Source of the DNA: Setoptus koraiensis
Lineage: Eukaryota; Animalia; Arthropoda
Assembly (NCBI GenBank): GCA_048013815.1
Contig: CM106586.1
Location: 9,796,001-9,860,000, forward strand
Length of the DNA: 64,000 nucleotides
Reading direction: 5' to 3'
The position numbers were made by a program, and so were the translations under genes. Below the pieces are notes generated by a model. It made no database searches. It was not told where the DNA came from and saw only the letters and a program-made list of their open reading frames with translations. Below are positions 2,489 through 63,900 of this stretch, piece by piece; the stretch's first letter is position 1; every line of letters begins with the position of its first letter.

Positions 2489-2621
2489 CAGTGGTTATGA
2501 TTTAAGTATATTAAAATCATCATCCAAGCAGTGGTGTCACTCCTCTGGTACCACACTCACGGTATCAAGTTCATTCAAGCATTATTTTTAGGTTGTTGAT
2601 TTTATTTGTCTTGATACAACA

Positions 2622-4118
2622 ATGGAGCGTCCGTCTATTAATACAATTTATGATTGGTTTAGTCTTAAGCAAATTGTCATAGGCTCGGCAACCTATGTAA
2701 CTATTCGTGTTATTTTGTTTGTTTACAATCGATATAAGCTGTACCAAACATTCAAGAAATTATCAATACCAGGACCAAAACCAAATTTGTTAGATGGAAA
2801 TTTATCAAACAAGAGGGCAGATAAGGCACAATTCATGGTAGTGCAAAGATGGAGGGAGAAATATGGAAAAGTTTTTGGTTACTTCATCGGAGATTTACCC
2901 ATCCTTGTTATTTCTGATCCTGTGATACTTCGTGAATTTCTCATTAATAACCAGGAAGTATTCATCAACCGAGCCCCTCCATTCATTGATGTGAGACCTC
3001 TCTCAAACAGCATACTCTTTGCCAGAGGAAACCACTGGAAATCGATGCGTAAAGCACTGACTCCCGCCTTCAGCCTCTACCGTTTCAAAGGAGAAGAGGG
3101 GACCAGATTTATCGACGACAGTATTAGCTTAATGATTGACTACTTATCCAAGAAACAACGGAAATCCAGGTCAAATGGAGACCCTATGGTAGTGGACATA
3201 CTCAGTCTCATGAAAGCCACTGCTCTTCATCTTATATCAACAATGGCAATCGAACTTGAAGATGTAAAAGTCAAAGAAGACGAGCAACATGTTAGGGTGT
3301 TGGATGAATATCTCGAAAATTGTGATGGCACTGTAGTTGGGTGGGCTATAAAATTACCAATACTTCAAACCATATGCTCTTTCATAGGAAGTAATATCAC
3401 TCTGGGTAAGATTCAAGACGACATTTTGAGTGAACTAAGAGCTAAATTGAAAAAATTACTACATTCAGACACATCCAAGAGTAGAAATATCTTTGAAACC
3501 ATGGTACAACTCCATAAAGAAGGCTCACTCAGCAATATAGAAGTTTTGGGGAACTCAATGGCTCTATTATTTGCTGGTTACGATACAACAGCCACTACTT
3601 TGGCTTATTTCTTTTGGGCTATATCAAAACATCGAGACATTCAAGACAGATTGAGATCTGAGATAATATCGCATGGTTGCGAGTCTGCATATCTGAAAAT
3701 GGTTTTAAATGAAACCATGAGGCTATATCCCACCGTGATCTCGTTCACTCAGAGAGAGGCATCCAGAGATATCACTATCGATGATCTCACGATAAAGAAA
3801 GGTGTTGTTGTAGTCGTAAGTTCCTGGCTTCTCCACCGTGACCCCGACATTTGGCGTGAGCCCGAGAAGTTCGATCCAGAAAGGTTCGTCGACATGAAGA
3901 AGATTGATACTTGCGCTTTCGTTCCATTCGGAATCGGTAATCGCTTATGTCTAGGCTATCAATTGGCTATGTTGGAGATGCGACTAATAGCAACAGAGTT
4001 ACTGATGACTTATGATTTTAGTCTTGTTAGTCCGAACACTCTAAGCTTTGTCACGTCTGGCAGTGTTTTGACTAAACCTGTAGATACTATTAGGCTGGAA
4101 TTGAAACCATTGTTGTGA
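2622..4118 (+). CDS. Cytochrome P450, CYP3-clan-like, intronless (498 aa)
   Basis: N-terminal membrane anchor, WxxxR (HWKSMR), I-helix AGYDTT, ExxR (ETMR), PERF (FDPERF), heme motif FVPFGIGNRLCLG. Confidence 0.95.
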   Translation: MERPSINTIYDWFSLKQIVIGSATYVTIRVILFVYNRYKLYQTFKKLSIPGPKPNLLDGNLSNKRADKAQFMVVQRWREKYGKVFGYFIGDLPILVISDPVILREFLINNQEVFINRAPPFIDVRPLSNSILFARGNHWKSMRKALTPAFSLYRFKGEEGTRFIDDSISLMIDYLSKKQRKSRSNGDPMVVDILSLMKATALHLISTMAIELEDVKVKEDEQHVRVLDEYLENCDGTVVGWAIKLPILQTICSFIGSNITLGKIQDDILSELRAKLKKLLHSDTSKSRNIFETMVQLHKEGSLSNIEVLGNSMALLFAGYDTTATTLAYFFWAISKHRDIQDRLRSEIISHGCESAYLKMVLNETMRLYPTVISFTQREASRDITIDDLTIKKGVVVVVSSWLLHRDPDIWREPEKFDPERFVDMKKIDTCAFVPFGIGNRLCLGYQLAMLEMRLIATELLMTYDFSLVSPNTLSFVTSGSVLTKPVDTIRLELKPLL

Positions 4119-4701
4119 TTTGACCCGTGAAATGAAATAATAAAAATCGTCAACAATGTCTCCATGCGACACCAGTTACGATACGGCTAATTTGATGAAA
4201 ATGGATATCGGATCACTTTAGATTAGTAAAATTAATAATAACAACAATAATATCGATATTGAATCGAGTTGCAGATTGCAATATAAATAAACATTTGTGC
4301 TGATTTGTTGTTGTCAGTTCATTTTCACGAAACTACCACATTATCGAGAGCAAGAAAAACAACATGCACAAATTCTCTCTGAACATAATGCAAGACTTCA
4401 CGTTTTGGACGTGCTAGGCATGGCGTTACTCTCGCTCGAAGCTCTTAGCATGCCAAGTTCAGGATGGGCCTGGACATTTGTTATTGCTTGTGATACAAGC
4501 CTTGTTTAATTTAATCAACTAGAATACTTGCCAACAGGATAAATTTTATTCTTCGAGAATCCCTGTCAATCTAACGTTCACTACAACAAGTGAACGAAAG
4601 ACAGTGGACAGTGGCAATCCATCCGATCATAGATATACATCGTGCATGAACAACGACCCCTTTAACAACTCAACGATAAATGATTACACTTGTTGAAACA
4701 T
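4113..4701 (+). repeat. Direct repeat, right copy (589 bp); starts across the P450 stop codon
   Basis: Begins ttgTGA (stop 4116-4118), includes the AATAAA just downstream, and ends at ...tgaaacat like the left copy. Confidence 0.95.
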
Positions 4702-5289: not shown

Positions 5290-6800
5290 CAACCCTTGCA
5301 TCAATGAGAGAAATTGTCAGAGAGTGTTGTTGTGACAGAGTGCCAGTGGCACGAGCACGAGTGAAGGCGATTCTGCATAGCGGGACACAAGTCGATCACG
5401 AGTTACCGCGAGGTGGGCGCGCAACGGGATAGCGGTCGGGGGAGTCCCGCCCATCGGAGATTCCTTCTCCCGCCGGGAGACGTCTCCCTGGCGGGGGACA
5501 AAGCACCGTAGATTTGCTCGATTTGCGCCGATGTTTTCTCTGTTTTTCATGAATCTCATATCATCCTGTTATTATATTCGCTTTATTTTTGATTATTGAT
5601 ACTGAAATTGGGTGGCACCAAGATGAAAACAAGAGTGCGGAAGACGAACTCCCCTCTGCCGCTTTCGGTCATTTTGAGTTTGAATTTGCCGCACTCGTCC
5701 AACAGGATGTAATCCTGGGTGTCGCGGAACTACCGTCGTGCTTCGCAATGTAGTGTGAATTTTGTGCAAGTTGGATTCACTGTGCTCCGGCAAACCGTTC
5801 ATCTGAAGGTTCGAAGCGAAGACTGAACCTTCAAATGAACCCTGTTGTCGGCAAGTGCACGCGAACACAGTGCACAACTGATCGAGTTTATCTCTTTGCG
5901 AACATCAATGGTTACGCCGGGATTTGTTACAGTTGCGACGACTCGTTCCAGGGGGACGCCTGTCAGATGCATGCCAGCAATGGGTGCAATGCACTTGTGC
6001 ACTATTGTTTCCATTGTGTGTGCTCTAGCTCACGCACAACATCTGGTTCGGGGAACAACTACGAGAGGCGCTCGCAACGCCTCACAACTGCGCTCAACCT
6101 TAGCCTCACTAAACTCTCGCTCTAATCTAGAGTACACTTGTAACAAAAACAAGCGAGCTCCGACACAAGTGCAGGCCCACTCGATCAAGCGCCCCGTTCC
6201 GCCATTTGTGAACAAACACACACAGGTAGAGGGGTCCATGTCGAGCCGCATGTTACCAACATTATTATCATGATGTTACCAACATCGTAGTAGCTGAAAA
6301 TCGAACGTAGAAATCCGGTGAGCGCGCCCTCGCGGATTTTTGTTTAATCGATTACGTGAGTACTTCGAAAGATACGCACACACAAAGCCCGGACTGTGCG
6401 GATGTGTTCTGCAGTCGCGAGCATTTGCGCTTTATTACCATCGTCGCAAGTCGTATCGGGTCCGCGCAGGACCTCAGAGGCGGACCTGGCACCGCCTCTT
6501 CATAGGTCTCCGTATCCATTGACTGCTGTGACGGTGTCAATCAGAGGACTGGATTTTCAAGGGGACCCGCTCAATAGGAGATGAAGCAGACGAGGCCTCT
6601 GGGGCCACGAGGCTGGGGTCAGAACGTCTAAAAGATGCAAAAGTTTTCTTTTTGCCCGCATCCGGCTTGACGTGATCGAATCAAAGTCACGCACAAATGA
6701 TGACCGGGTTTCGCTCTCTGCGGGCCTATTCTCGACGAACAATACCCTTGTAGACAATACCCTGTGCACGCACAAAATGCTGTTTTGTGCATGTTTGAGC
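5290..6800. other. Unassigned GC-richer, hairpin-rich segment with broken ORFs (possible decayed mobile or viral element)
   Basis: Several inverted repeats (5797-5840, 6311-6339, ~5475-5488, ~6770-6790) and short ORFs on both strands. Weak resemblance of the minus-strand NLQMNGLPE...HPVGR to LINE ORF1. Confidence 0.25.
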
Positions 6801-6911
6801 ACGATTACCATCGCCTCTACAGTGGTATATATTGAGAAATGTGCTCGCTAATTTGACATTCACCTACACCAGCTTCACTATACTTATTTGTCTTTTAGCC
6901 AATCTTTTTTT

Positions 6912-7191
6912 TATCGACATACTCAATAGTTCCGGATATAGAAAATCTTTTACCATTATCTACCATCGCTACACATACTACAATATTAGAATTATTACCA
7001 ATACCAAATTATTGTCAGAATGCTTTATTTGCGTGCAGCTAGAGAATTCAGACCTCTCCTCAATGGTTGTAGGACATTCAAAACAGAGACTGCATCGTCA
7101 CCTTCATCATCCCTAAAGGGTGTACTAGCGCAAAAGATTGTTGAACACCAGAAAAAAGTCAAAGAATTTCGTGGCGTTCATGGACACAAAG
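6912..7191 (+). repeat. Citrate synthase 5' flank and presequence, donor copy duplicated at NDUFS8
   Basis: 6912-7110 and 7171-7191 align with 50363-50564 and 50565-50585. Confidence 0.92.
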
Positions 7192-8408
7192 TCATTGGTG
7201 AGATCACGGTCGATCAGGCGTACGGTGGTATGCGCGGACTTAAGACATTAGTTACTGAAACATCATACTTAGATCCTGACGAGGGTATCGCATTTCGTGG
7301 ATATTCCATACCCCAAATTAGAAAACTTTTACCATCAGCAGACGATGGCCAAGAGCCACTACCAGAGGGTCTACTTTGGTTGCTATTGACTGGCGAGATA
7401 CCAACCAAAGATCAAGTCAAATCTGTCTCAAAGGAACTGGCTCAGCATGCTGATTTATCATCACATGTAGTATCAATGTTAAATAATTTACCCTCTAACA
7501 CACACCCTATGTCACAATTCTCTGCGGCCATCACTGTGTCCAACTCGGAATCTCTTTTTGCTAAGGCATACGCCCAAGGTGTACCAAAGGCCGTCTACTG
7601 GGAGTATGTCTATGAAGACTCGATTCGCTTGATAGCGAAATTGCCCACAATTGCAGCTACTATCTATAAAAATCTTTACCGAGACGGTTCGTCAATTGGA
7701 GCGGTCAGCTCCGATAAGGATTGGAGTGCCAATTTTACATCAATGTTAGGCTACACTGATCAACAATTCACCGAATTAATGCGTCTCTATCTGACTATTC
7801 ACAGCGACCACGAAGGAGGCAATGTGAGCGCTCATGCCACCCATCTAGTTGGTAGTGCTCTATCTGATCCATTTTTGTCCTTTGCTGCGGGCATGAATGG
7901 ACTTGCGGGACCATTACACGGACTAGCCAATCAAGAGGTGCTTATTTTTATAAAGAAACTACAAAAAGAACTTGGTGCTGACTTTACTGAGAATCAGTTA
8001 AAAGAATTTATATGGAAGCATCTGAAATCAGGACAGGTTGTGCCGGGCTACGGACACGCTGTTTTACGTAAGACTGATCCGCGTTACACAGCTCAGAGAG
8101 AATTTGCCTTGAAACATTTCCCCGATGATAACATGTTCAAACTGGTATCTACTTTATATAAGGTGGTACCAACAATTTTGTTAGAATTGGGCAAGGTAAA
8201 AAACCCATGGCCTAACGTGGACGCGCACTCTGGCGTACTTCTAACCTACTACGGTATGACTGAGATGAACTTTTACACTGTTCTCTTTGGAGTCTCAAGA
8301 GCTCTTGGAGTTTGTTCATCTTTGGTTTGGGATAGAGCTTTGGGATTACCTATAGAACGCCCTAAATCGATGACCACTGAGGGACTGATGAAATTGGTTG
8401 GTTCATAG
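7020..8408 (+). CDS. CS: Citrate synthase, mitochondrial, intronless (462 aa)
   Basis: Catalytic motifs [45 protein letters not shown]; Arg-rich N-terminal presequence. Confidence 0.98.
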
Positions 8409-8454: not shown

Positions 8455-8841
8455 TTACGTGTTAAACCGACGCTGATATCTTCTGTAATGTTGCGGTGTA
8501 TTTTGGTTGCTAGTCGACTGCCTGCTTTGTTTTCGTTTCCTATCTCGTTCTTGATCCCTATCTCTTTCCTCCTGTTCCTTTCCTTTTTGGTAGCGGAACT
8601 CTTCCAAAGAGCCAACAGAAGATCCTAAATCTCTATTCCTTTCCATTATTTCCTTGTCGTAACTTAGGCCCATCGTTTCGATATTGATAAACAATTGTGA
8701 CAGGCATACCAATTTGTCGATGGTATACCCTTTGTCCTTGTGGGCCAAAATGAAATCCTTGCGTAGTTTCCATTGATGCGGCAATTCATAGTTTTTCCTA
8801 TACACGTCGACATTTTTCTCATTTAGATGGGATGTAGTCAT
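8455..8841 (-). CDS. XRN2-binding domain (XTBD) protein, PAXT-1/CDKN2AIPNL-like
   Basis: YRKNYELPHQWKLRKDFILAH...DKLVCLSQLFINIETMGLSYDKEIME fits the XTBD pattern; charged C-terminal tail. First ATG at 8841. Confidence 0.75.
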   Translation of the reverse strand: MTTSHLNEKNVDVYRKNYELPHQWKLRKDFILAHKDKGYTIDKLVCLSQLFINIETMGLSYDKEIMERNRDLGSSVGSLEEFRYQKGKEQEERDRDQERDRKRKQSRQSTSNQNTPQHYRRYQRRFNT

Positions 8842-11800
8842 TTTGGTTGGAAACAACAATGAAGTGTTTCCCGTTAATTAATTTGGAAAAATATACGAAT
8901 CAGAGGGCTAAATTATAGAAGGGGAGCGCTAGATATCACAAATGCTGGTCTATAAGATTCATATTTCCTAAATATACTAGTAGTAATGAATAATGTTTTG
9001 ACGATTCCGCAATTAAATTTTATAAATTTTATAATGTATTAATTACAAGTTAGAAATAAAGACGTGCAATCAATATAATACTTTTGTCAAAATCCCGTGC
9101 GTTTTATCCTCATGGCGGGGTCATTTCATTATGTTGCAGTTCACATGAATACTGAAGGGCAACAGCGTTGATTTTTGCAACCCAAAAACACTACTGTCAA
9201 ACATATGATTTCAAAGCATACAGGGAATCTTAGTGCAAATATCCTCCTGAAGAGGGCACGAGAAAAAATTCCCTACAAGTTATAGGCTATAACTCATCTG
9301 GTTGTTGCGCTCACATTTCAACAAGCAGCGCCTCTCTGAGCATCAGGCCATAACCAAAAATCATCCAAGAGAGCGTTTTTCAGGTTTGCACACAAGTTGG
9401 AGGCTTAACAAGCCTTACGATTTGTCATGTTCTGACTTGTGATTTGTATCATACGAAACTCTCTAGATGCTAGTTCATAGGAGCCCCAAACCAGTTGAAA
9501 AAGGTTGAGCCGGTTCTCTGAAATAGGCACTGCACCGGTCGGACAAGCCCACGACAAATAGCGAGGCTCTGATGTCGGACTAATGTTGAGGAAAACAACG
9601 ATAGCGAATTTGAGCATCTCAAACCAGCATTCCAGCAGTACACAGTAGTGTGGCCACTGGGGGTCCATTGATAAAAGGCCACAATACACGCACTGTTATT
9701 ATTTACACTGTCAATATTAATATCAACGAACAGAACCACGAGTGTTGCTGCACCAATAATACAGACCCGTCATTATCTCAACACACATTACGGATTACAT
9801 TGAATTGATCTAGCAAGTGAATTGCCAGTAGTTATCCAGCAGCGGTGGGCATTATTAATATTATTTACCACTACACACTCTGCAGAATATATTAGTCTAG
9901 AATTCATTTTGCGAGCAAGAAAGAAAACGATGTCAAAATAGTGGACTTGGCCCAGTGATAATAAAACCACTAAACTACTTGTGCCTGTCGGCGCATGACC
10001 CGGCCCCCATATCCTATTCACTGGCACATCAGTGAGGATCGCTTTTGTTGGGGCCAGCAAACACACGAACAAAGGCCATTAGACCTAGTCGGGCGGGCTG
10101 AACAAACAAGCAAACACATTGACATATGGAAACTAATCTGTCTAGGCACACATTCTTGCGGGACTTGCTGCTAGCTGATACCGGTTGTTGTTGATTGATG
10201 AGAGCTGTGTTATTAGATAGATACAAGCCAGCGCTTCTCAATGCCTCCGTGTGTAAACACTGGATAATCGACTAGGATTGACTTTTTACATTATGATTTG
10301 ATTATTATTACAAGCAACAAGACAAATTTCATCTTGATAAGCTCACGCGCTAACACTGTCTTGCTTTGTTGTGAGCAGGACGCACCCACAAGTATAAGAT
10401 ATTTTTTATTATTATTGCAGCAACAACAAACTACAACAACAATCTATGAATAATTTCAAGTGAGAGTAAAGAAAGTATATGTGGAAATCTATCTAATGTA
10501 CTAATTGAATGTCTACGACATCAGCCAGTATTCAAGTTTCACCACAATCAATTGCAACAAAAACAACACCCTCGGAGCGAGCTTCCACTGATAGCGATAG
10601 CAATAGCTATTCGCCGATAACCAGCCAGGATTCCATTATACCATGATGCGTTATACAAGAATACGTAAGTTCACCATTCCTATTATCTAATACATACTCA
10701 GTTGAGTTGAGTAGATTTTGATGCTATCAACTATTACATTGTCATGGCCATTATGCAACAGCAGCAGCAGTGATATTCTATATGAAAGCTATTGTAAGTT
10801 GGACCTTTGTTCCAAATATCATATGTTGTAGCTCGGGCATTAACTCACACCACCATGCAATAGTCCGATCAGTCAACAAAAAGAAACACAGACACACACA
10901 AGAATAAAAAATCATTGAAATCGCCGTGATCAAATATCAAACAAATATCAAAAACAACAAAAAAAAAATACAAGTACTTTATCGTATAGTTTATCTTTGG
11001 CCACATTAATCGAGCAGTGAGAACAAGAACGATAACACCTATAACGCATTATATTCTTACGTGACATCATGATGATTTAAGTGTTTGTTACTATCAATAT
11101 TTGTTGTTGCTGTTGTCGTGTCGTGATATCTTTCGTGGGCATTGGGAGATGACTTGTAGCACGCGATCAGTGTCTTGTAACGCGCCCGTAATGGACTCGA
11201 GCTAAAAATGCAATCAAGTGTAAAGTAATTATCTACATGCCTCGCAACTTTATACTGCTGCTCTTATGAAATAGCCCTAGAGACTTTCAGAGAGAGAGAG
11301 AGAGAGAGACAAATTCTAGTTTTTAGTCGAATTTAGTTAAATGTGTAATCCGCAAGATAGCTCGAGAAAAGAAGGAATATTTTCATTGTTTTCGTTACTT
11401 TTAATGAAAAGTCGCTGATTAGTCGGTTAAATTCTTCTTTACTATAATTCTTCTATGCTAGCGAAAGCGTTTGTGGTGTGTAAAACAACTTGGAGAGATT
11501 GACAACAATTGAATTTATCGCCAGATCTAGCCAACAAGTGCAAGTAGACATGTGCCATTGTTGATATGAATACACAGTTTATGGACAGTTAGGCGTATTA
11601 TTGGCTAAATACTAGCATTAATCGAAACGCACCTTAAGTTTTCCTATGACAACTGGCATCTGACAACAAGAGTTATGCGACAAAAATAACAACAATAGCA
11701 ACATCTAACGTCTAACGAGGTTAATTTGGCGAGCCCTACGCCGAGACCGGGTGCATTGTTTTTTATCATGGGTGCATGCAGTGAGTGTGTGTGATGACAG

Positions 11801-47292: not shown

Positions 47293-49728
<2,436 letters not shown>

Positions 49729-49885
49729 TTTGAGTATGAAATTAGGTGTGCTTGTGTCTATCACTAAATATTTGATAATTTTTTAAAAATTCTATAGCTT
49801 TTTAAATCTTTGGGTTTTAAACAAGGATCGATCCGAATGAGTGTTAAACGCCCAAGGTGCAGGCTTGTGTGTCATTGGTGCGATG

Positions 49886-49894
49886 TTTTGGCGC
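49886..49894 (+). promoter_or_regulatory. E2F-type site TTTTGGCGC upstream of MCM7
   Basis: Matches TTTSSCGC about 160 bp upstream of the MCM7 ATG; MCM genes are classic E2F targets. Confidence 0.4.
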
Positions 49895-50362
49895 CATTCC
49901 TTTCTTTGTTTTGATTTCTGTGCAGGTCCCTAAGAGAAAGGTATGTGAGTGAGTAGAAAAAAGCTCTTTTTCAAGTGACTACTGTGCTGAGCGGCCACGG
50001 GTAGTGTATGTCGGGCTACGCCTTTTTCTTGTACCTTGAGCGGGTGTAAGTTAGAAAGGACTATTTAGTACGTGAATGTGAGCAATACAGTCGAATATTC
50101 TAATTGTCTTTTGTTACAATTGCGTCATAACTGCCCTCTCTTCGATTGACAAATGGATAATTTGAACAAAAGCCGGGCCTAGAACGGGTACAGTTCACGG
50201 GTGTATGCCCGTACGGGTAGAAAGGTTTTGAGTAGGCGTGTGAACTGCGCAGGCACGACATAAACAATAGTCCTGTGCACGCACCACAAAGGTGCTTTGT
50301 GCATGTGCTCATAAAATAAATATTCACGTTTAAATGGTCATATGTTTCTATTGGCAGTGCCC

Positions 50363-50585
50363 TATCGACAAACGCAATATTTCCGAGGATAGAAAATCTT
50401 TCATCATCATCTACCATCACTATAGATATCACTATAATATTATAATTGTTACCAATACCGTATTATTCTGAGAATGCTTTATTTGCGTGCAGCCAGAGGA
50501 TTTAGACCTCTCTTGAACGGCTGTAGGACATTAAAAACGGAGACTGCATCGTCACCTTCATCATGTGACGTTCATGGACACAAAG
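50363..50585 (+). repeat. Citrate-synthase-derived 5' flank and presequence, recipient copy
   Basis: 82/91 nt identical over the first 91 coding bases versus 7020-7110; flank similarity continues upstream. Confidence 0.92.
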
Positions 50586-51124
50586 CCAAGACCGATTTCA
50601 GAAGTGTTACCGCACATCCAGACTGGGAAGATTGGAATGTTATCGGAAAAAAAATAACCAGCTCCGTGCTTTGGTCCGAAATAGTTCGTGGTAGTCTGTT
50701 AACGTTGGGAGCTTTCTTCAAGGAGCCAGCCACCATCAACTACCCATTCGAAAAAGGACCCTTGAGTCCCAGATTCAGAGGCGAACATGCACTTAGGAGG
50801 TATCCAAATGGTGAAGAGCGTTGTATAGCTTGCAAATTATGCGAGGCCATTTGTCCAGCTCAGGCAATCACTATCGAGGCAGAGGAAAGAGCAGATGGTA
50901 GTAGGAGAACAACTCGTTACGACATTGACATGACTAAGTGCATATATTGTGGCTTCTGTCAGGAGGCTTGCCCAGTGGACGCCATAGTGGAGGGTCCGAA
51001 TTTCGAATACTCTACAGAGACTAGAGAGGAATTATTATATAATAAGGATAAACTATTGACTAATGGCGACAGGTGGGAAGCCGAGATAGCAGCCAACATA
51101 GAAGCGGATCACCTGTATCGCTGA
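50474..51124 (+). CDS. NDUFS8: NADH:ubiquinone oxidoreductase core subunit S8 (TYKY), intronless, chimeric N-terminus
   Basis: [27 protein letters not shown], two 4Fe-4S motifs [12 protein letters not shown] and [13 protein letters not shown]-terminus ADHLYR. Confidence 0.98.
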
Positions 51125-54100
51125 GTATGACAATAATAAAGATTACTGCTTGTCTCGCGGCGGCAGTAGTCATCTAGTCTCCTTAGTGAATTGGAGTTCC
51201 GATTGGTTGAATAAAATAGATTTCGCCAGTAGTACACTAACACTCACATACACACACATTTGCACAATTTCATTGCATCATTGTGAAGCACCTGCAACAG
51301 GGGTTAGTTATCAATGTTATCTCGTTATTAATATAGCTGGTCACCTAATTTATATTCCTCTTTCATCATGTAATATTCTAAACGATTAAAGCAATTTCAC
51401 CGGATCATCGTATCTATCTTTTTCTTGTTCTGTCTCTCTCTCTTCTTAGCATTAATTTATTAATTTAAACTAGTAATAACAACTATGTGAGGATAGACTT
51501 GGACAAAAGGCAAGAAGAAAAGAAAGAAATTGATTAAATTTTCACCAGATTGGTGTTTTCTAACTAGTAGTTTGTAATAGTAGTGCCAGCAGTAATAGTA
51601 GAGAGAATAGCAAAAATTATTGCCAGCACTAATGATAGTTAATGGTTTGCTTAATGATCGCCATCAAGTCAGTCACGCAATTTTAATCATCGTTCAAGGT
51701 GCTACTCATGATGATTATTATTACTATTAATAACAATACTGATGGTAACAATAATAATAGCCGGCCAAGAAAAAGAATAACAACAGATTAGATAAATGAT
51801 AGTGGTGGTGGTCGTCGTTTATGCAATCAATCAGTTGAAAACTAACTACAAAATCATCGAAGCGATAGCAAGAGGAAACAAGGTTGTTGGTTGTGGTGCC
51901 TACCACATCAACAACAATTGATCGATGGTCGTTGGCTTACATCAATGGGTCGTCACTAGTGATGGACTAATATTGCAGCCAATGTGGCGTTTATCTCATT
52001 AGATTATATCAAAGGCAAGTTGCGAGATTTGCTACATAATGGCTTGTATATGTAAAAAGAAGAAGATCACTTGTTGTTATTGGTGGCGATGATGAGGGGA
52101 CCAGAGGTGAGAATTGGCGCAATCATTGATGGTGGTCACGATTACACGTTTACCTCGGGCTGATGGATCGACTGGTCAGCCAGCAACGATGATGCCTAGG
52201 TTAGTTGTATATTAGTTGGGTATAATGGAGGGGGGGGCGGGCATTTAGACGTGAATGATGCCATCGTCAACTGTACGACCGCCGATGGTCAGTTGACTAG
52301 TGGCGCCAGCAAGTGTCAACAATGTATTGACAGATAATTTATTATTATTACATGTACATGTTGGCTGCTGTTATCCTGTTATTTGGACACCATTGCTATC
52401 TGGTGTTTGTATTATTTGTTCGCCAATGACAATGACAATGACGTTAGTGTTTACGTTTGCACTGACTACTATCACTTGTTGCTGTGATTCAGACAAAAAT
52501 TTATATGAGCTGCGATTCTGTTGGCGCCAGTCTTGCCAGCCGCGCCAATTGTTGCAATTGTCGCAACATTGCAATGCCGTGGCCTGACAGATCTGAGATA
52601 ATTACCATGATACAATCAACGCTGTTATCGACGCTGACGTTGTTTGGGAGTGATGCAAACCGTGGCGACACACCAAACAAACAATAATAATAACTGTGAC
52701 AATAATACAGTAATATATAAAGGGCAGATAATATATGGCAGCGACAGTAAACAAGAGCATACCTAGAGAGGTCATTTGTTGTCGGTGTCACGGACAGTTT
52801 GAGTGTGAAAGCATCGCAGTTTATCGACTCGGACATGAGTCGATAAACTGACAATGCAACCGCGATACTAACAAGATCCTTGCACATGCAGTCCATTATA
52901 TATTGTCGCCGGACAATACTTGTCCGGCAAACGCCTCGGGCTGGTCTCTTTGCCAGGCTCTCCCGTGTGTCCCGGCCCCTTCTTGGCGGCCCCCTGACCA
53001 CGGGTGGCTCCGCTGACAGTTGTTGTATGGATGGCATTTGTTGGCCAATTGGAATGAATTGGAATGGAGTCAATTAACGCGACTGTTGAGGGACATTTGC
53101 CAATGAATTGAAGATTTTCCATTCTTGTTTGCTAGCGAGCGAGTGTGTGTGTGAATCGGCAACAATTGTGTCCGACGGCCAGAGTCAACTGGACCGCCGG
53201 CGGGGCGCCCCGCCTGAATCATCTATCATTGGCGTTAGCATTGTGAGCGTTGTTGGGCGCGTATTGTTTTGGCGTAGTTGCCGCGGTGATGTCATCGCGC
53301 CAACTTGATAAATTGAACACCAACATGCCGCTGGAATTCGCGAGTTCAGTTTGCCAACTTGTTGCTGACACGGCCGCATTGTGCCGGCCGCCAACAATAT
53401 TAAACAATATAAAAGGAACGCGATATTGGCTATCGAAATATATTTTTGTCGACTCCATGTTGAATGTTTGAACGCTCGAACGATATGGAATATTGAATAT
53501 TGAATGGCGACGCAATGTTTGTGTTGCGCCACCATGGGCACCGTCCATTGGCACCGTCCATGGGCACCGGCCGCATCACTGGCTGATGCGGCCACGACCG
53601 CGGCCAAGCTGTGACATGATCAATTTATCGGCGATATTTTAATTTTTATCTCGCAGCGTTCGCAGCGACAATGTTGCCATGGTGATGACTGGCCACCATT
53701 ATCTCTCTCGCACCGACTCAACACACTTGTTGGCGTTATAATTGGCCGGCGTGTGTGTCGGTGTCGGCCAGTGGCACTCCCCGTAATAGCCGGACTCATC
53801 TCATTTCTCACCTATCCGAAGATGGATCCGATCCCGTCTGTAAAGAATCCCGTCTGATCGGCCCGATGTGACTGCGTAGCGCCGCGTCTTTGTCCGCTCC
53901 TCTCGGCGAAAGTCCCGCGTCGTGTGAGGCCACCGCCCATTGCATGATTGATCACCTCGGCACCGGACAACAGTGGGCAAGGCCGGCAACGGCGACGACG
54001 CCGGTCGCGGCAGCGCCAACAAACGGCTCATCGCGTCGGCCGCTGATGCGGCGTGCCAAGACTGACAACAGCGCGAGTGGAGCCCGTCCTCGTCGGCCAC

Positions 54101-55461
54101 CTCGGCGGTCAGTGCGGGCCAATCCGGCGGCCATTGAGGGCCAATTCTGATAGGATCGGCCGCTCGATGCGGCCGTGGCGAGCAACAAAACAGTGCTCTT
54201 GAACCGGCCCAAAACCGACGGGCCCGAGACTGGTCGGCCCGAAACGGTCGGCCCGAAACGGTCGGTTCGGCCGCGCGGGCGCCCTCGTGCCTGTCCGCCA
54301 GATGCCGCCACGTCCGATATGTGACCGCGCACAAATGGCACTCCGCAAATCCGAGCACCGACAATTGCGATTGGTCTCATCGTCATCATCGCTGGCTCAT
54401 TGAGCGTGCGGTCAATATGTGGCCGCTGTCTCGTCACTGTCCGTTCTGTAAAGTTCACCTGTAAACTTGCGGTCGGTGGTTGACACGATGCGCATTGGCT
54501 TGTTGTATTGGCGCGATGCGGATTTACATGACGCGGACGGACACGATGAGCGCGACGACAAAACGGGCGAATCTCGTACAAGCGGCTGCCGGGCACCACC
54601 ATTGAGCGGGTTCGGCTGAGGCGGGCCAGCCAGCCAGCGACTAGCGACCCGCAGCCGGTCGGCCCACCAAAGAGGGCGCAGAGAGCGCAAAGAGGGCGCC
54701 GAGAACGCCAAAAACCAAATACAGGTGACACCTCGTCGGCAATTGTGCGATAGTTTGTGCGTGCGGTCTCGCCCGGCTCGTGCAAATTGGCACGTACGAC
54801 CGCAATTGTTGTGAGCACGCGGTGTGTCATTACCGGCGTCCTCATTACCGGCGCTGTTGCTGGTAGTTGCTGGTGGTTGCTGGTAGTTGCTGGTAGTTGA
54901 TGGTAGTTGCTGGTTGTTGCTGGTTGTCGGCTGGTTGTCGGCCGGTTGTGTTATTTGCGGCCACGGCGGCGAAAAGGTAACAACGGCCCGTCTAGAGCAA
55001 AGAGAGCCGGCCGACAGAATTACCTCTACACAATTCGGGTGGTCACGACGGCGCCAAATTAACGCCACCGATCGACAACATCAGCAACAGCAACAGCAAC
55101 AACGGCAACAGCAACAACAACAACAACGGCAACAACATTAACAGCGGCAACAACAACAACAACCTCGACGACAACACCTGAGAGGTGGCCACGCAAACAA
55201 GTGACGACGAAAAGGAAGCGACAAGAATGGGCGGCGTCTCAATTAGACAACAACAACAACAACTTGCCGGCCACCATCAGCGCCGCCGACAGTTAATTTA
55301 TAAGCAACACTACACGCCCACTTACCTGAGTTATTAGTTTGCTCTTGTTTTCTCTCTCGAAGTGGAGCGGCTTTTCTCGTTTGATCGCGGCCACTTGTTG
55401 TTGTTGTTGCCGTCGCTGTTGTTGTTGTTGTTGCCATTGCCGTTGTTGCCGTTGCTGTTGC

Positions 55462-55499
<38 letters not shown>

Positions 55500-56529
55500 C
55501 TGTTGCTGTTGCCGTTGTTGCCGTTGTTGTCGCCGCACTGGTCAGCGCGAAAACTGAGCTGCCAGAGAGCCGCCAAATGTGCTCCGACCCGAGACGCAAA
55601 TGTTGTGCTCACTCACCTGTTGTGCACAACACTGGCGCAACAGCCGCCGTTGAAATAAACGAATCCAATGAGCTAATGATACTGAGTGTGTGCCTAAGTA
55701 AATGATGACACAACAAACGACGGCCCTAATTGGACGACCACCTACAACGGCCGGCGCGCAAACGCCAGTTATATCATCAGCGGTTGTATCATCGTCGGTC
55801 GCATGGTCGCCGGTTATATCATCGTCAGTTATGGCGTGCCGGCCACTGCAACGTCCGCCGTCCGCCGTCCGTTTTTAGTGGATCACATGACCAGATTAGG
55901 CCGGCATTATGTGTTATTTATGTATTATTTATGTAGCATAATGTGGCCAGATTATAGAGAGCACGGCCGGGCAAATTGAGCAGTCAAGTCAATTGTCCAG
56001 TGTGTGTGTGTTGACGTGCTTAAATTAGTTTTTAATTTGCCTCCAAACAAGGCCACTCACAAATTGTGAGTCACAATGGCCAAGCGGCCCGGCCGAGCGA
56101 AGCCCATAGAAGCCCAGAGAAGCCCATAGAAGCCCAGAGAAGCCCATAGAAGCCCAGAGAAGCCCAGCGAAGCCGAGTTACCTGTAGTTGGCGTGTATTT
56201 ATTGCAGCACATGACGAGCGCACATTAGGAGCACTTTGGTATGCGTATATTTCGTTTATGTATATTTGCTGCCGTTTATAGGCCGCACTTAGGCGACGGC
56301 ATACGTAACATGGCGACGTGGACGCATAACATGGTGACACCTCTGTCCGACAAAACGTCGCTCGACTGTGACAGCCACAGCAACTATAGGCGACTTTTGG
56401 CACTTTGGCCACTTTGGCCCGGCTAGCTCGAGCTTCGGCCGACAACAGTGCGACTGACAACAGTGTGAGCGAAGCCAGTTTTATGGCCTGTGCATTCACG
56501 ACAATTATCCGGCAACAGTCAGCGAAGCA

Positions 56530-57937: not shown

Positions 57938-60900
57938 CATTGGGCTGGCCTTGCCGTTGTCGTGGCAACGCACACAGCCCTTGTGATACAGGTGAGCTGC
58001 ACGGGTGCCATAGTGGCAAACGAAGAAATGAATTGCGCAATGCAAAGCCATTGCGCAATGTCCACTTTTGGCAACAACATTTACCTATTATACCGCTACT
58101 AATGCATCAATCTGTCTAGTGGTCCAGCTCGCCTGAGTGTCGGTGTCTCTTTGTTTTTGTTGCCGCTGTTGCCGTTGTTGCCGCTGTTGCCGCTGTTGCC
58201 GCTGTTGCCGCTGTTGCGCCGCCGTGTTACGTCATCGCCGGCCAGCCCGGCCAGTTCACGCCTGTCCATCGCTCGCCGCGCCGGCCACTGGTCAGGCGCG
58301 AAGGGCGAGCGAGCGTCGGCTCGGCACTGTCGACTCGACAGTGTCCACCGCTCATTAATTGGCCGGCGCTCGAGCTCGGGCTTCGAATTTCGAATTGCGA
58401 ATTGCGAACTCGGGCTCCGGACGGCGAATTCGCAACGGCGAATGTCGAACTTGCGCCTCGAAGCCGGCAGTTCGAACTTGGAGTTTCCAACTTCAAATTT
58501 GGCATTTCGAAGCGCCTCGCGCCGAGAATGCGAAACGCAGCGCAGCGCGCCCGACAATGGCAAGTTGAACGGGTGCTTCCACCATTGCGCATTATTGCGT
58601 TACGCAAGCCGGCCCGTCACTCACCGGCAACAAAGGGCGGCCGGCCGGCCGGCCGGCCAGTGCGCGGCCGAATATGCGGCCAAAGTGCAGTGAATGCACG
58701 CCGGCCTAAATCGGGCCGCGGCGAAATGACGCAACGAGCGCTCGCATATGAGCGCTAGTTAGGAGGCCGGCGGCGCAAGTGCAAGAACAATGCCGATGAT
58801 TGGTGCGCGTGGCATTGACAAGCTCTAATCATGACGTCATCATCACCGGACAGGCGGGCCTGTCAGTGCCGGCACCTGTAAAAATATTATTATGTAACTT
58901 TGCGTAATGTGTGTGTGTGTGTGTTGAACAGTGTGCATTGTGCGCCGGACAACTCGGCACAACTTGTTGCGTTGGCTCGCCACTTACGGCCACCGGCCTG
59001 TTACCTGTCGAGCCGTGCCGACAACGGCCACCAATTCGACGCCCAGTTCGACAGGTGAGTTCGGCGGCGCAAGCGGGCGCTTCTCGCCTCGAGTGTGTGT
59101 GTGTGTGTGCGCTGCGAGCCATTTCCTCAGGGCGCGTCCGAGCGGCGTGTGGGGCCTCCATGGTTGCGCCTGGCATCGGGCGGGCGCAAATTAGAGGGTT
59201 CGTTCGCCGCCGTTGCCGCCGCTTCGTCGGCGCTGTCAGTGGGCCGGCCGTCGGTCGGTGGGCAGCGCAAATTCAATTACCTGGCCAGAGCGTTTTTGTT
59301 TGATCTTGTAATAACTTAATGCGCGCACTTTGCCGGGTCGCTCCTTCGCTCGCGCCGCCGACCGTCGGCTTCGAGCCGCGAACTCGCAACTTCGCACTCG
59401 GCACTCGCCGCTGCCAACTTCGCACTCGCAACTTTGAAATTTTGGAGCTCGCAACTTTTAGACTCGCAAATTCATGAATTTATGAATTCATGAATTCATG
59501 AAGTCGCAACTCGCAACTCGGAACGAACGGCCGACGGTGGCGCAGTCACACAATCGGCGAGCAACTAATTGCGCTCAATTAGTTGCTGTTAGCGCCGCCA
59601 CCTCGGCGACCCTCATTGTGACGCTGTGGCCAGCGGCGGGCCGGCAGCATTGCGCCGGTAATGATGCCATCGACTCGCCACCCGTCCGACGTGTAACATT
59701 TGGCGCGTCTGCCCAATAATGCAGCCAGTGATATCACTCATCGACGGGTATCACATTGTACATTGGACATTGTACATTAGACATTGTACATTGTACATTA
59801 GACATTGTACGTTAGGCGGCGGCGGCGGCGGAAACTGGCCAACGGATTCATCCATTGAATCTATCGGAACTTCCAATTTGGAAGGCGGATAGTTGGCCCG
59901 CATGGGCACCGCATCAATTGCATTCATTCGCAATTGACGTCGGTGGCGCTGGCGATCCATGGCGCGGCCAGCATCAGCGGCAACAGCCGCTGTTGAACAG
60001 CGTCAAAACGACGCTCGGTGTTATGTAACACTTGTTGCTCGGCGCAACTTGTTACATAACACTCACAAATTGTGAGCCACAATGGCCCACAAGCGATACT
60101 CGCACAGGCAACAGACGCGCCGGCGATAGTCGCACACAGGTGAGAGATGCACAGGTAACAGACAGACAGGTAAGAGATGCTCACGTAATAGGTGCACAGG
60201 TAATAGGTGCACAGGTAATGGATACAATGGTCGCGGCGAACAAGTGCCCGATTCACACTGCGACCATTTTCGTGCTCCTATTTTCTCAATTGGCTAATTA
60301 TAGCCTGGCCGTTGCCACTTGCCCATTCGCCACTTGCGCCAGTCTCGCCAATCGCGTCCCAATCTCGTCTCCGATGGTGGCGATCGGTCGAAACATCTTG
60401 CAACCGCTTGGCAAGTCACACAATTGTTGCCAAAAGCATGTTGCATAATGCTGCATGTTGGCCAATGTCGGACGTTGCGCAACATTGGGCGCAACATTAC
60501 ATGATGCGCAATTATCATTATTATGCAATTACATCACATATGCTGGCGAGCCGGCCCTGCAAACGACCGTTAGCGTTTGCAGGCAACGCGGCCAACTGGC
60601 TCACAATTTCGCAACTGACGATTAATCAATTAGTGCAATTGCGATCCAGTGGCCAACGCCGGGCTCACCTGATCAATTAGCTACCGGGCGAGCGTTTCAT
60701 TTGGCGGCCATTTCACATGCATATTATGTAATGTGCATTGGCGCCCGTCTCTCCCTCTCTCTCTTGTTATCTCGCCCGTCTCTCTCTGTCCGATCGCTGT
60801 GTCCGGCGGCTCGCTCTGTCCGCGCCGGGCACTGCGCTCATTATGTTGACTTGGCAATGGCTGTCGGCAAGGGCGCTCACATGATTCACATTACATAATA

Positions 60901-63900
60901 TACATATGAATTATATATTACATCATCATAAATATCAAGTGTGACAGTGTCACATGATACGCTCGGCGTGTCACACGGCCGCGCCGGCCGGGCAAGAGGG
61001 CGCCACCACTCATTAGCAGCGCTCATTAGCGGCAAATGAGTGGCGCAGCAAATGACGACACAGCACAGGACAACCGCTGTGACTGTTGTGGCGCAACAGG
61101 TACCCGCGCCGGCAGTAGGCCGCGGTCGGACATAGTGAGATATAGTGAGACATGGTACGTTCATAAACGAATAAATTAGTCAGTGTCTCGGCATCGTCGA
61201 CGGGCTTATTATCGGGCCGCTTGTGCCGTCTCGCTCACTCTGTTGCCCGCTGCGGTGCTCGTTGCGGCGGCCGGGACTCGTCGCTGCTATTCGCCGTCGG
61301 AACTCATCGTTGGGATTCACTAGATTTAGTGTGACAGCGGTCGCAACAAGTGCGCGCCGGGCCGCAAACAGGAGCGCAATCCGCAGAGCGTTTGGCAAAT
61401 AAGTGGCCCGGCCGAGCTCGCCAGCGACACGGGCGTGATTAATGGTTCGTCTCATTACACTCTCTCCCGACTGCCGACTGCCGACTCTCTCGACTCTCGG
61501 AAGCGCCCGCGAGTCAAGTGCTGAGCACTCAATTTGGCACTCATTTGGCACCCGGTCGGCGCTCGGTTGGCGCTCGGTCGGCGCTCGTTTGGCACCCGTT
61601 TGCAATGGGAAAATGGCCCGTTTTGCGGCGGAATGCGAGCGTTGCGACGGCTCTCGGGTCGCGAGCGATTTGCATACACGCACACATTGTTTCGCATGGC
61701 GATCGACAGAGCAGACGCAGGGGCTAATTGAAGCGCCAAAGCGATAATTCGAAGCTTTGTGCCGACACTGTCCGGCCGGCGAGCGGCCGACAAAATTGCT
61801 CGCCAACACACTCAAATCATTTGAGTCAAATGAGCACATATGCAAATGAGCGCTTGATTGGAGTGCTTGTGTTTGTTCGAGAGATTTGTTGGTTGCGGAC
61901 GCAGCGCAAGGATGACCAACAACAAGTGGCCGCAAAGGAATTCTCGCTCGCCAATGTGATGTGGTGGCGGCGGCGGCGGCGCAAAATGCAAATGTTGTGC
62001 CAACAGCGACAACGACAGCAACAGCGCCGAGCCGCACAACTGACCAGTATGGGCCGCTCGTTCTTTTGTAGTTGCCGATTTAACAGTGACCGCAATGACG
62101 GCGCGCCGAGGCCGCGCTTGCGCCGCCAGGTGAGGGCAGCCAATTTATGGTGGCCGTTATTGCGCGCTGTCCGGCGACGGTGTCCGTCCGTCACAACGAA
62201 CGGCGGCGAGCGTACAACAGCAACATCAACAACAGCAACAACAACAGCAACAGCAGCAACAACGACAACAACAACAGCAGCAACAACAACAGCAACAACA
62301 ACAACGACCACAGCAACAGCAACAACAGCAGCAGCAACAACAGCAGCAGCGGCAGCAACAACGACGCCGCAAAAGAAGCCGCAAAGCAAATAGATAATAA
62401 ACTGTGATGCGATTTGCATTACGACGGTCGCCGGCCAGCGACCGAGCCCGGCCCGAGCGGCCGCGCCAACCTGTTGTAGTGCTGTGTGCATTGTCGGCCA
62501 TTGATTTACAGCCGCTGTTAAAAGCTGTTTGCCCACGAGAGTCGCACCTGAGCACAACATTCCGCGCCAGCAACCACAACAACGACAACAACCTCCACAA
62601 CGACAACCACAGCAGCCACCACGACGACAACGACAACACTGACCGACGCTGTTGTCGCCGAGCGACATTCCGGCGAGTCGCTGTCTGCGAACGCCCTATA
62701 ACGAACGACCGTCGCTGCCCATGATGTAACCGCATGCGTACATGTGACACACAACAACGCCACTGAGATCCCTATATGCGTTTGTGGCGCAACGCGCCAG
62801 CTATTGCGTAACACCAGTGCGCCCTCTGCCTGCTCGGCGCCGCAAACAAAGTCTTGATTTCGACTCCCATCCCGTCGCATCGGCTCGCATTATGTCGTTT
62901 GGCCTGGCGTAGGCGCCCCGATATCTCGCCAGAGGAGGCCAATCGAGTGAATTGGCGTCCAAAGTGACCATTCTCTCAGTGGCTCTTCGGCCCATTTCCG
63001 CTCCTCGAAACGGTCGCCCTTCAAACGGCTCAATCCGATTGAGTCAATGGAGCCATTCGAACGACGCAAACAGTGAGCGGCCAACAAAACAAGCAACGCG
63101 CATACCCGGCCAACCAGCCACAAACTGAGCGACATTCCTCTTTGCGCACCGAGGCAAGCTAATTTGAATTTGTTAATTTGAGTCGAATTAACAAATTATT
63201 TGACTCAAATTATTTGAGGTGCGCGCAACGCACATTCCGCGCTTGAGACTCTCAAGTTGAGAGCGGCCGTGCGACGAATTGTCGTGCCAACAATGGCCAC
63301 CGACCCCATAAATTATGCGAGACAACACTGTGCACTAACTCTCAAATTGAGAGTCTCAATTCGATTAGTGGCGGCTAATTTGGCGCAATTAATTGTGGCG
63401 TAATCGTTCAATCGACCAGTCGATTGTCGGTCCGCCTATGGCGCTCACCGGCGACAAATCGGTCGGCGGGCATTCGGGCAGCGGGCGGCGGGCCGGCCGC
63501 GAACGAAAATTGTCGCCACAATGCAGTCGCCACAATGCGGTCACCACAATGCAATCATCGCGAAGCCGCCGGCGACCGCGCGAGGCCGTGAGCACGGATT
63601 GCCGCGCCTTGATCGCCGGGCTGGCATCGCGCATTTCCGGATAGGCCGGGCCGGGCCGAGCGCAGCATTGCGCGGGTACGAATAATTTGTCAAATCAAGT
63701 TGGGGGTGTGGCTGGCGCGGCGGGACATTCGGGACTGTTGAGACGGCCGGACAGTCGGGACTTTCGGGACTTCCTGGGCCGGACCCTCGGGAGTGTTCGG
63801 ACGGTCGGGAGCGTTCGGACGGTCGGGAGCGTTCGGACGGGCGGAGCGTGTTGAATGGCGGGCGCGGCGCGGTTTTATGGCCCTGCGTTGGTTACAACAC

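What the first reader, a model, noticed from the sequence alone, without database searches (positions are those of the whole stretch)
50363..51124. NDUFS8 has taken its mitochondrial presequence and 5' flank from citrate synthase
Seen in sequence: NDUFS8 starts [37 protein letters not shown] and citrate synthase (7020) starts [30 protein letters not shown]-(20 aa)-RGVHGHK. The first 91 coding nt are 82/91 identical. Seven of the 9 differences are synonymous and 28/30 residues match, which suggests selection on both copies as peptide. CS bases 7111-7170 (exactly 60 nt) are missing from the copy with the frame kept, homology resumes for 21 nt, then NDUFS8 sequence begins. About 110 bp of 5' flank is also homologous. 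Direction (inference): VHGHK lies in the mature CS N-terminal helix region, so CS is the donor. Established: presequence recruitment from other nuclear genes is known for plant organelle-to-nucleus transfers (e.g. rice rps11). I do not know of it for a long-nuclear animal complex I core subunit, where it would replace the native leader and possibly couple TCA and OXPHOS expression.
Basis: partly seen in the sequence, partly recalled or inferred. Interest (0 to 1): 0.9.

Follow-up and report, generated by a model that had tools for sequence, protein, structure and literature searches.

The report
NDUFS8 start copied from citrate synthase
In this gall mite, the complex I core gene NDUFS8 has lost its own promoter-proximal region and mitochondrial import signal and now begins with a copy of the neighbouring citrate synthase gene's upstream region, 5' leader and first 37 codons. 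It is a recent, datable swap of import signals between two old nuclear genes in an animal.

Summary
Window 50363-50564 copies citrate synthase (CS) 6912-7110: 87/107 in the 5' leader and 82/91 in the coding part, with 28/30 residues identical. Sixty CS bases (7111-7170) are absent and the frame is kept. 50565-50585 copies 7171-7191 (20/21). A further upstream block, 50261-50306, matches 6751-6794.

A sister species settles the direction. Its CS has the same MLYLRAAR leader. Its NDUFS8 sits at the syntenic locus next to the MCM gene and has an unrelated 48-residue leader. Homology between the two NDUFS8 loci restarts exactly at 50585.

Three-way site counts (25/7/20) and dS (about 0.33 between the copies, 0.46-0.57 between the species) place the copy after the species split.

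Independent public runs carry contigs that cross the junction. Two of these runs cover only the transcribed parts, so they look like RNA. Mis-assembly is excluded.

Seven of nine leader differences are synonymous, and there is no usable downstream ATG, so the borrowed leader is translated.

Import, cleavage and co-regulation with CS are inferred, not shown. I could not search the whole genome for a second NDUFS8.

The scan has flagged many similar 5'-end captures elsewhere in this genome, so this is one well-supported case of an apparent genome-wide habit.

The parts
6751..6794 (+). Donor: conserved upstream (promoter-region) element of citrate synthase, CCTGTGCACGCAC...TTTTGTGCATGT, an imperfect palindrome
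   Evidence: Conserved in sister CS (continuous win/sister homology starts at 6751) and copied at 50261-50306
6912..7019 (+). Donor: CS 5' leader block, starting at a DRE-like TATCGACA. It contains no ATG.
7020..7110 (+). Donor: CS codons 1-30 plus 1 nt, the presequence [30 protein letters not shown]
   Evidence: the same leader is on sister CS P0121
7111..7170 (+). CS segment ([20 protein letters not shown] region of mature CS) that is absent from the NDUFS8 copy
   Evidence: conserved in all CS relatives, so it is a deletion or skipped segment in the copy
7171..7191 (+). Donor: CS codons for (R)GVHGHK, part of mature CS
7020..8408 (+). Intact, intronless citrate synthase gene (462 aa)
   Evidence: Pfam PF00285 E 2.7e-96; 98% identical to sister CS; dN/dS 0.016
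49888..49927 (.). Last stretch of the MCM-NDUFS8 spacer still alignable with the sister species (37/40). It marks the leftmost possible limit of the replacement.
49928..50260 (.). 333 nt of unassigned origin between the orthologous island and the CS-derived segment
   Evidence: No similarity above shuffles to the CS upstream, sister CS upstream or sister NDUFS8 upstream plus leader
50261..50306 (+). Copy of the CS upstream element
   Evidence: 82.6% over 46 nt to 6751-6794; exact CCTGTGCACGCAC occurs only at these two places in the window
50307..50362 (+). Shortened, diverged copy of CS 6795-6911 (56 vs 117 nt). It keeps ATGTGCTC...ATTCAC.
50363..50473 (+). Copy of the CS 5' leader (87/107 identical, no ATG). 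Transcript-like contigs begin here.
   Evidence: X7 contig starts at 50363, X8 contig at 50422
50474..50564 (+). Copy of CS codons 1-30, now the NDUFS8 presequence [30 protein letters not shown]
   Evidence: 82/91 nt and 28/30 aa identical
50565..50585 (+). Copy of CS 7171-7191 (reads CDVHGHK); the right end is the fusion junction
   Evidence: 20/21; sister NDUFS8 homology restarts at 50585
50586..51124 (+). Native NDUFS8 body (AKTDFRSVT... to stop) with both 4Fe-4S motifs
   Evidence: 97% aa identity to sister P0001; dN/dS 0.021; Fer4 Pfam hits

Best explanation
After this mite split from its sequenced sister species, a DNA segment of about 430 bp from the 5' end of citrate synthase was copied to the NDUFS8 locus. 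The segment comprised the conserved upstream region, the 5' leader, the start codon and the first 57 codons. The copy lies 43.5 kb downstream of the donor on the same strand. It joined in frame three codons before the position matching the mature N-terminus of bovine or human NDUFS8.

The copy replaced NDUFS8's own promoter-proximal region and 48-residue presequence. It now measures 325 bp because of deletions, or template jumps, of 60 nt in the coding part and about 60 nt in the promoter part.

The gene is now transcribed from about 50363, within or just downstream of CS-derived promoter sequence, and translated from the CS-derived ATG. I infer that it is imported using the CS presequence and is probably cleaved at the shared R18-T-(F/L)20 site. 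That would leave a short CS-derived stub on mature NDUFS8.

Shown: the homology, the direction, the timing relative to the sister, the physical reality of the junction, transcript-like coverage and purifying selection on the peptide.

Inferred: import function, cleavage site, promoter use, and a DNA-level copy-paste mechanism (end joining or template switching, 0-1 nt of microhomology).
For: Homology blocks are.

Sister species:
- CS P0121 carries the same leader.
- NDUFS8 P0001 at the syntenic locus (MCM gene upstream on the minus strand; both flanks collinear) carries a different leader.
- The sister's two loci show no similarity to each other.
- Window/sister homology restarts exactly at 50585.

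Other eriophyoid NDUFS8 leaders are unlike the CS leader.

Timing:
- Three-way sites are copy=donor 25, copy=sister CS 7, donor=sister CS 20. Binomial p for 25 vs 7 is 0.002.
- dS is about 0.33 between the copies against 0.46-0.57 between the species.

Junction-spanning contigs:
- X6: 49700-50646, depth 112, equal to the 117.6 of the gene body.
- X7: 50363-50646.
- X8: 50422-51108.
- X7 and X8 have no cover over the 600-nt spacer.

Translation: 7 of 9 leader differences are synonymous. There is no in-frame ATG before residue 153 and no ATG in the leader.

Presequence character: net +5 in the first 22 residues and hydrophobic moment 0.85, against +2 and 0.48 for the sister's native leader.
Against: - Whether X7 and X8 are RNA is inferred only from their coverage pattern; the tool gives their kind as unknown.
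- X4 contigs abut at 50576-50579 and do not bridge the junction. They show no alternative junction or loose end either.
- Only one close relative is available, so polarity rests on one outgroup plus the site pattern.
- The whole genome could not be searched for a second NDUFS8 with a native leader.
- The left edge of the copied segment is not defined: 49928-50260 is unassigned.
- Import and cleavage are untested.
Confidence: 0.85

Rival explanations
1. The copy predates the species split and the sister species later replaced or lost it. The greater likeness of the copy to the window's own CS would then be due to gene conversion between the two window loci.
For: Only one outgroup is available. 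The two loci are on the same strand, 43.5 kb apart, which would permit conversion.
Against: - The sister NDUFS8 locus has no trace of CS-like sequence.
- The site pattern of 25 vs 7 favours a post-split origin.
- The longest identical run between the copies is only 25 nt and divergence is spread evenly, so there is no recent conversion tract.
- Other eriophyoid NDUFS8 leaders are unlike the CS leader.
Confidence: 0.05
2. The borrowed peptide is a passenger. What was selected was the captured promoter and 5' leader, and import relies on signals elsewhere in NDUFS8.
For: Another follow-up in this genome judged a captured 14-3-3 N-terminus to be a passenger (an unchecked AI note). The copy retains CS promoter motifs.
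Against: - The native presequence is entirely gone and the junction sits 3 residues before the mature-type N-terminus.
- 7 of 9 differences are synonymous.
- Both amino-acid changes keep or improve presequence character: E9G removes an acidic residue, and F20L keeps an R-x-(F/L) site.
- NDUFS8 in other animals carries a cleavable presequence (established knowledge).
Confidence: 0.07
3. RNA-mediated origin: a 5' fragment of CS mRNA or cDNA was joined to NDUFS8.
For: The best-conserved block starts at 50363 = 6912, where transcript-like contigs begin. Both genes are intronless.
Against: - Homology continues upstream of that point: 50261-50306 = 6751-6794, plus the ATGTGCTC...ATTCAC motif.
- There is no poly(A) tract and no target-site duplication.
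- Retrocopies normally keep 3' ends, not 5' ends (established knowledge).
- The CS transcription start was not measured.
Confidence: 0.04
4. Assembly artefact, or the reverse direction (CS took the leader from NDUFS8).
For: None after testing. One low-depth run (X4) has a contig break 6-9 nt left of the junction.
Against: - Three runs from two further studies carry contigs across the junction with 0-1 differences.
- Sister CS has the leader and sister NDUFS8 does not.
- The remnant GVHGHK is a conserved CS motif.
Confidence: 0.01

Closest known systems
Presequence acquisition by duplication of existing targeting signals in plants. Rice rps11-1 took its presequence from atp2, Arabidopsis sdh3 from hsp70 and carrot rps10 from hsp22, as summarised in PMC2631504, which cites Kadowaki et al. 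1996 EMBO J.
   Same: A mitochondrial protein gene carries a presequence copied from an unrelated nuclear gene for another mitochondrial protein. The donor gene stays intact.
   Different: In the plant cases the recipients were genes newly transferred from the organelle, with no presequence of their own. Here an anciently nuclear animal gene with a working presequence had it replaced, together with the promoter-proximal region and 5' leader. The sister species still shows the earlier state.
Young chimeric genes formed by partial duplication or illegitimate recombination in Drosophila (e.g. PMC1463047, PMC4069613)
   Same: The 5' part of one gene (regulatory region plus first codons) is fused in frame to the body of another. 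Junctions have little or no microhomology.
   Different: Those events usually create an extra gene while both parents persist. Here the chimera sits at the ancestral NDUFS8 locus and appears to be the working copy of an essential gene. A simple unequal crossover cannot give this arrangement, because an intact CS, the 43-kb interval and the CS5'/NDUFS8-3' chimera are all present.
Other 5'-end captures flagged in this same genome by the scan: PAN3/Sirt1, 14-3-3/UGPase, LMBRD1/PPCS, LRPPRC/STOML2, ZnT9 and SCO1/mRpL22, CISD3/SCOT, NDUFAF4/NDUFB11 (AI notes, three followed up)
   Same: The same anatomy: a copied upstream region, start codon and first codons of one gene in front of another gene's body.
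   Different: Those cases were not examined here. This one adds polarity from a sister species, relative dating, junction-spanning independent contigs and evidence of selection on the borrowed peptide.

Membership tests
NDUFS8 / TYKY (complex I 23-kDa Fe-S core subunit) | Two CxxCxxCxxxCP 4Fe-4S motifs and high identity to named NDUFS8 proteins | tested here: met
   [12 protein letters not shown] and [12 protein letters not shown] are present. Fer4 Pfam families hit. Identity is 74-97% to NDUFS8 proteins, including named ones.
NDUFS8 / TYKY (complex I 23-kDa Fe-S core subunit) | Orthologous position and purifying selection on the body | tested here: met
   Both flanks are collinear with the sister contig. 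dN/dS is 0.021.
Mitochondrial citrate synthase | Citrate_synt domain over the full length and close named relatives | tested here: met
   PF00285 E 2.7e-96; 84-98% identity to eriophyoid CS
Chimeric gene by partial duplication (5' capture) | The donor gene is intact elsewhere, and the paralogous segment covers the upstream region, start codon and first codons | tested here: met
Chimeric gene by partial duplication (5' capture) | The recipient's orthologue in an outgroup lacks the segment, and homology to the orthologue resumes at the junction | tested here: met
   (restart at 50585)
Chimeric gene by partial duplication (5' capture) | Transcripts cross the junction | tested here: inconclusive
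   X7 and X8 contigs cross the junction and cover only genic parts, which looks like RNA. The tool gives the runs' library type as unknown.
Cleavable N-terminal mitochondrial presequence | N-terminal, net positive, few acidic residues, amphipathic-helix potential | tested here: met
   Net +5 in the first 22 residues; hydrophobic moment 0.85 for an 11-residue window
Cleavable N-terminal mitochondrial presequence | Directs import and is cleaved by the processing peptidase | not testable with these tools
   Only a motif reading: R18-T-(F/L)20 fits the R-3 pattern known from other presequences (own knowledge, not tested).
Plant-type presequence borrowing after organelle-to-nucleus transfer | The recipient is a gene recently moved from the organelle genome | tested here: not met
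   NDUFS8 is nuclear with its own leader in the sister and in all other mites retrieved. The case works like the plant cases but is not one of them.

The most novel reading that the evidence does not exclude
Replacement of whole 5' modules (promoter region, 5' leader, start codon and N-terminal signal) by copies taken from other genes may be a frequent, systematic mode of gene evolution in this streamlined gall-mite genome. It may be tied to its deletion bias and DNA repair. Mitochondrial genes would then exchange presequences among themselves, because only donors that supply an import signal survive selection. NDUFS8/CS would be the best-polarised example.
Probability: 0.35. Interest if true: 0.8.

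Novelty: new variant of a known kind. Interest (0 to 1): 0.6.

Why it matters
This is a natural, recent and polarised experiment in the interchangeability of mitochondrial presequences. An essential complex I core subunit works with the import signal, 5' leader and promoter-proximal DNA of a TCA-cycle enzyme, while a sister species keeps the original leader.

Borrowing of presequences was known for plant genes newly arrived from the organelle, which needed a signal. Here a working signal was replaced in an animal. That allows direct tests:
- whether the donor leader imports better than the native one;
- whether NDUFS8 is now co-regulated with CS;
- how a stub of CS sequence is tolerated on the mature subunit.

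Together with the other captures flagged in this genome, it points to a testable genome-wide process in eriophyoid mites.

Tried and rejected
- **Relic of the native leader.** I looked for it, and for further CS-upstream homology, in 49765-50362 by blastn with word size 7, local nucleotide alignment and translated alignment against the sister leader. Nothing rose above shuffles.
- **Leader on other proteins.** Among proteins of 254-808 aa in the 5.8-billion-protein set, only sister CS has it. Proteins outside that length range, and this genome's own proteins, are not covered.
- **Exact-sequence look-up of the chimeric protein.** It is not on record, so no further loci could be fetched.
- **CCTGTGCACGCAC as a general promoter motif.** Only the two exact sites occur. 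With 2 mismatches there are 4 sites against 1.5 expected, which is not significant.
- **Simple unequal crossing-over.** Rejected on logic: its products are either a deletion carrying CS5'/NDUFS8-3' without an intact CS, or a duplication carrying NDUFS8-5'/CS-3'. Neither matches.
- **Raw-read RNA runs of 2026 (X14-X22).** These carry the label organism C. Other RNA runs with that label hold none of the gene, so the label is probably the host plant, and I did not spend the single read-laying run on them.
- **Eriophyoid genome papers.** Keyword searches of the two papers for chimeras, gene fusions or presequences found no report of such swaps. The only hits in the A. lycopersici paper are a transcript-merging annotation artefact and a reference title.

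Full report
**1. The observation**

Reading the two places and listing ORFs shows two intronless genes on the + strand.
- Citrate synthase (CS): 7020-8408, 462 aa, Pfam PF00285 E 2.7e-96.
- NDUFS8: 50474-51124, 216 aa, with two 4Fe-4S motifs.

Both begin MLYLRAAR. Repeat finding and blastn give three collinear blocks.
- 50363-50564 = 6912-7110 (84.7% over 202 columns).
- 50565-50588 = 7171-7194 (22/24).

By region, the 5' leader is 87/107 identical with one 3-nt indel, the first 91 coding nt are 82/91, and the resumed piece is 20/21. CS 7111-7170, exactly 60 nt, has no counterpart in the copy and the frame is kept. A 20-nt probe from the start occurs only at these two sites, against 0 expected by chance. 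Every number in the finding is right.

**2. What organism, and what relatives exist**

Earlier notes of the scan call this a gall-mite (eriophyoid) genome. The best named protein hits are eriophyoid (Fragariocoptes setiger) and other mites.

One much closer relative exists in a single public sample, SRR33593474. Its NDUFS8 (P0001) is 97% identical over the body and its CS (P0121) is 98% identical over the full length. I fetched both contigs as L001 and L002. Synonymous divergence between the two species is 0.57 for NDUFS8 and 0.46 for CS, with dN/dS of 0.021 and 0.016. They are distinct species, and both genes are under strong constraint.

**3. Direction and timing**

Sister CS starts [35 protein letters not shown], the same leader.

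Sister NDUFS8 starts MLSINYLRLISPRILPTSPSTTVAIVHNQGRFLCSKAGSTTEGAAKKE and then AKTDFRSVT, which is where the window protein also continues after ...CDVHGHK. The sister gene is at the orthologous locus.
- The MCM gene lies upstream on the minus strand.
- Collinear homology runs up to 49729 on the left.
- On the right, homology restarts exactly at 50585 and runs to 52168.

The sister's NDUFS8 and CS loci share nothing with each other. Other eriophyoid NDUFS8 proteins carry leaders of the type MRPNIR..L.RRANSTQ, unlike the CS leader. The remnant GVHGHK corresponds to the FR..HG.KVIG motif of mature CS, conserved in every CS retrieved. CS is therefore the donor and NDUFS8 the recipient.

In a three-way alignment of window CS, sister CS and the copy, the variable sites split as follows.
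- 25 where the copy agrees with the window's own CS.
- 7 where it agrees with sister CS.
- 20 unique to the copy.

The 25 vs 7 split has p = 0.002. This is what a copy made after the species split predicts, and it also shows the copy evolving about three times faster than the donor since then. dS between the two leaders is about 0.33 on few sites, below the 0.46-0.57 between species.

**4. Is it physically real and expressed?**

Contigs of four public runs other than the likely source were laid on 49700-51400.
- X6 (depth 112) has one contig covering 49700-50646 without a difference. It runs from the MCM end through the spacer and the CS-like segment and 61 nt past the junction. The body contig has depth 117.6, so there is no collapsed second near-identical copy.
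- X7 has a contig covering 50363-50646.
- X8 has one contig covering 50422-51108, almost the whole chimeric ORF.
- X7 and X8 have no cover over the 600-nt spacer. X7 does cover the MCM 5' end up to 49756. This is the pattern of RNA, not DNA, but the tool lists their library type as unknown, so I call it transcript-like.
- X4 (depth 4-7) tiles the region, but two of its contigs abut at 50576-50579, so it does not bridge the junction. It shows no alternative junction.

Mis-assembly is excluded. Transcription from about 50363 is likely.

**5. Is the leader translated and used?**

The next in-frame ATG is at residue 153, inside the second Fe-S motif region, and the 111-nt leader has no ATG. A functional protein must therefore start at 50474.

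Seven of the nine coding differences are synonymous on the parsimonious count. Fisher p is about 0.001, or 0.008 with the 6/3 path-averaged count.

The two replacements fit a presequence. E9G removes an acidic residue, and F20L keeps an R-x-(F/L) site. The leader has net charge +5 in its first 22 residues and a hydrophobic moment of 0.85, against +2 and 0.48 for the sister's native leader.

Aligned by eye to human NDUFS8 recalled from memory (not fetched with a tool), the junction K37|A38 lies three residues before the position matching the mature N-terminus. On that reading the swap removed the whole native presequence and none of the conserved mature protein; the eriophyoid alignment shows conservation starting a few residues after the junction. 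Import and cleavage are inferences.

**6. Anatomy of the event and likely mechanism**

CS-derived sequence spans 50261-50585 (325 nt) against 6751-7191 (441 nt) in the donor. The difference is made up of the 60-nt coding gap and a 117-to-56-nt shortening upstream of the leader, offset by a few small insertions in the copy.

The conserved CS promoter region, as judged by continuous window/sister homology, also starts at 6751. Its motifs survive in the copy: CCTGTGCACGCAC...TTGTGCATGT, ATGTGCTC...ATTCAC, and a DRE-like TATCGACA at the start of the leader. The resemblance to DRE is from memory, not tested.

Left of 50261, 333 nt (49928-50260) match neither the CS upstream region nor the sister's NDUFS8 upstream region. 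The last orthologous island is 49888-49927.

At the right junction, donor ...CACAAAG meets recipient CCAAGACC, with at most 1 nt of shared sequence.

Homology extends upstream of the probable transcription start and there is no poly(A) tract. I therefore favour a DNA-level copy-paste, either end joining or replicative template switching. It may have happened in steps: insertion first, then deletions that trimmed the redundant native leader and most of the mature CS piece. Simple unequal crossing-over cannot produce an intact CS, the 43-kb interval and a CS5'/NDUFS8-3' chimera together.

**7. Context in this genome**

The scan's other notes list many similar cases in the same genome.
- Between mitochondrial genes: LRPPRC/STOML2, ZnT9 and SCO1/mRpL22, CISD3/SCOT, NDUFAF4/NDUFB11.
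- Between other genes: PAN3/Sirt1, 14-3-3/UGPase, LMBRD1/PPCS, MPND/Fip1.

Three of these were followed up by other agents. They are unchecked AI notes and I did not test them. They make a genome-wide process plausible, but they are not evidence for this case.

In this window, the sister comparison also shows that the P450 cassette at about 2218-4233 is present only in the window lineage. That is another recent copy-paste event.

**8. Comparison with what is known**

Copying of presequences from other nuclear genes is established for plant genes newly transferred from the mitochondrion: rps11-1/atp2, sdh3/hsp70 and rps10/hsp22 (PMC2631504). Chimeric genes formed by partial duplication are well known in Drosophila (PMC1463047, PMC4069613).

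This case works like both but differs in three ways. The recipient is an anciently nuclear, essential animal gene that already had a presequence. The chimera occupies the ancestral locus and is not an extra gene. The promoter-proximal region and 5' leader came along with the presequence.

Keyword searches of the two eriophyoid genome papers (chimera, fusion, presequence) found no report of such swaps, and my literature searches found no animal precedent. These were limited searches and do not prove absence.

**9. Verdict**

- Co-regulation of the TCA cycle and OXPHOS is untested.
- It is a new variant of a known kind: a solid, datable example, probably one of many in this genome.

Noticed in passing
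The sister contig L002 is collinear on both sides but lacks the stretch between the repeats. The cassette is therefore an insertion in the window lineage or a loss in the sister.
   Followed up: partly
window 49888-49927 = L001 9647-9686: A 40-nt island (37/40 identical) is the only part of the MCM-NDUFS8 spacer conserved between the two species. It may be a promoter element of the divergently transcribed MCM gene.
   Followed up: no
window 50647: A/G polymorphism in the A-run ggaaaaaaaataacc, seen in runs X8 and X4. Contigs of X6 and X7 break at this spot.
   Followed up: no
window 6912, 50363; L002 about 9330: A DRE-like motif lies at the start of the conserved 5' leader in all three sequences: TATCGACA in both window copies and TATCGATA in sister CS. 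The resemblance to the Drosophila DREF site is from memory only.
   Followed up: no
window 8455-8859 (-); L002 10899-11285 (-): A small XTBD-domain gene converges on the 3' end of CS in both species, so the CS neighbourhood is syntenic.
   Followed up: no
window 55043-55191, 55372-55557, 58134-58244, 62170-62653: Long imperfect CAA/CAG (or TTG/CTG) codon-repeat tracts, probably poly-Gln coding.
   Followed up: no
window 51125-51400: Transcript-like contigs of X7 and X8 run about 275 nt past the NDUFS8 stop. This is either a long 3' UTR or an overlapping transcript. AATAAA occurs at 51135 and 51212.
   Followed up: no
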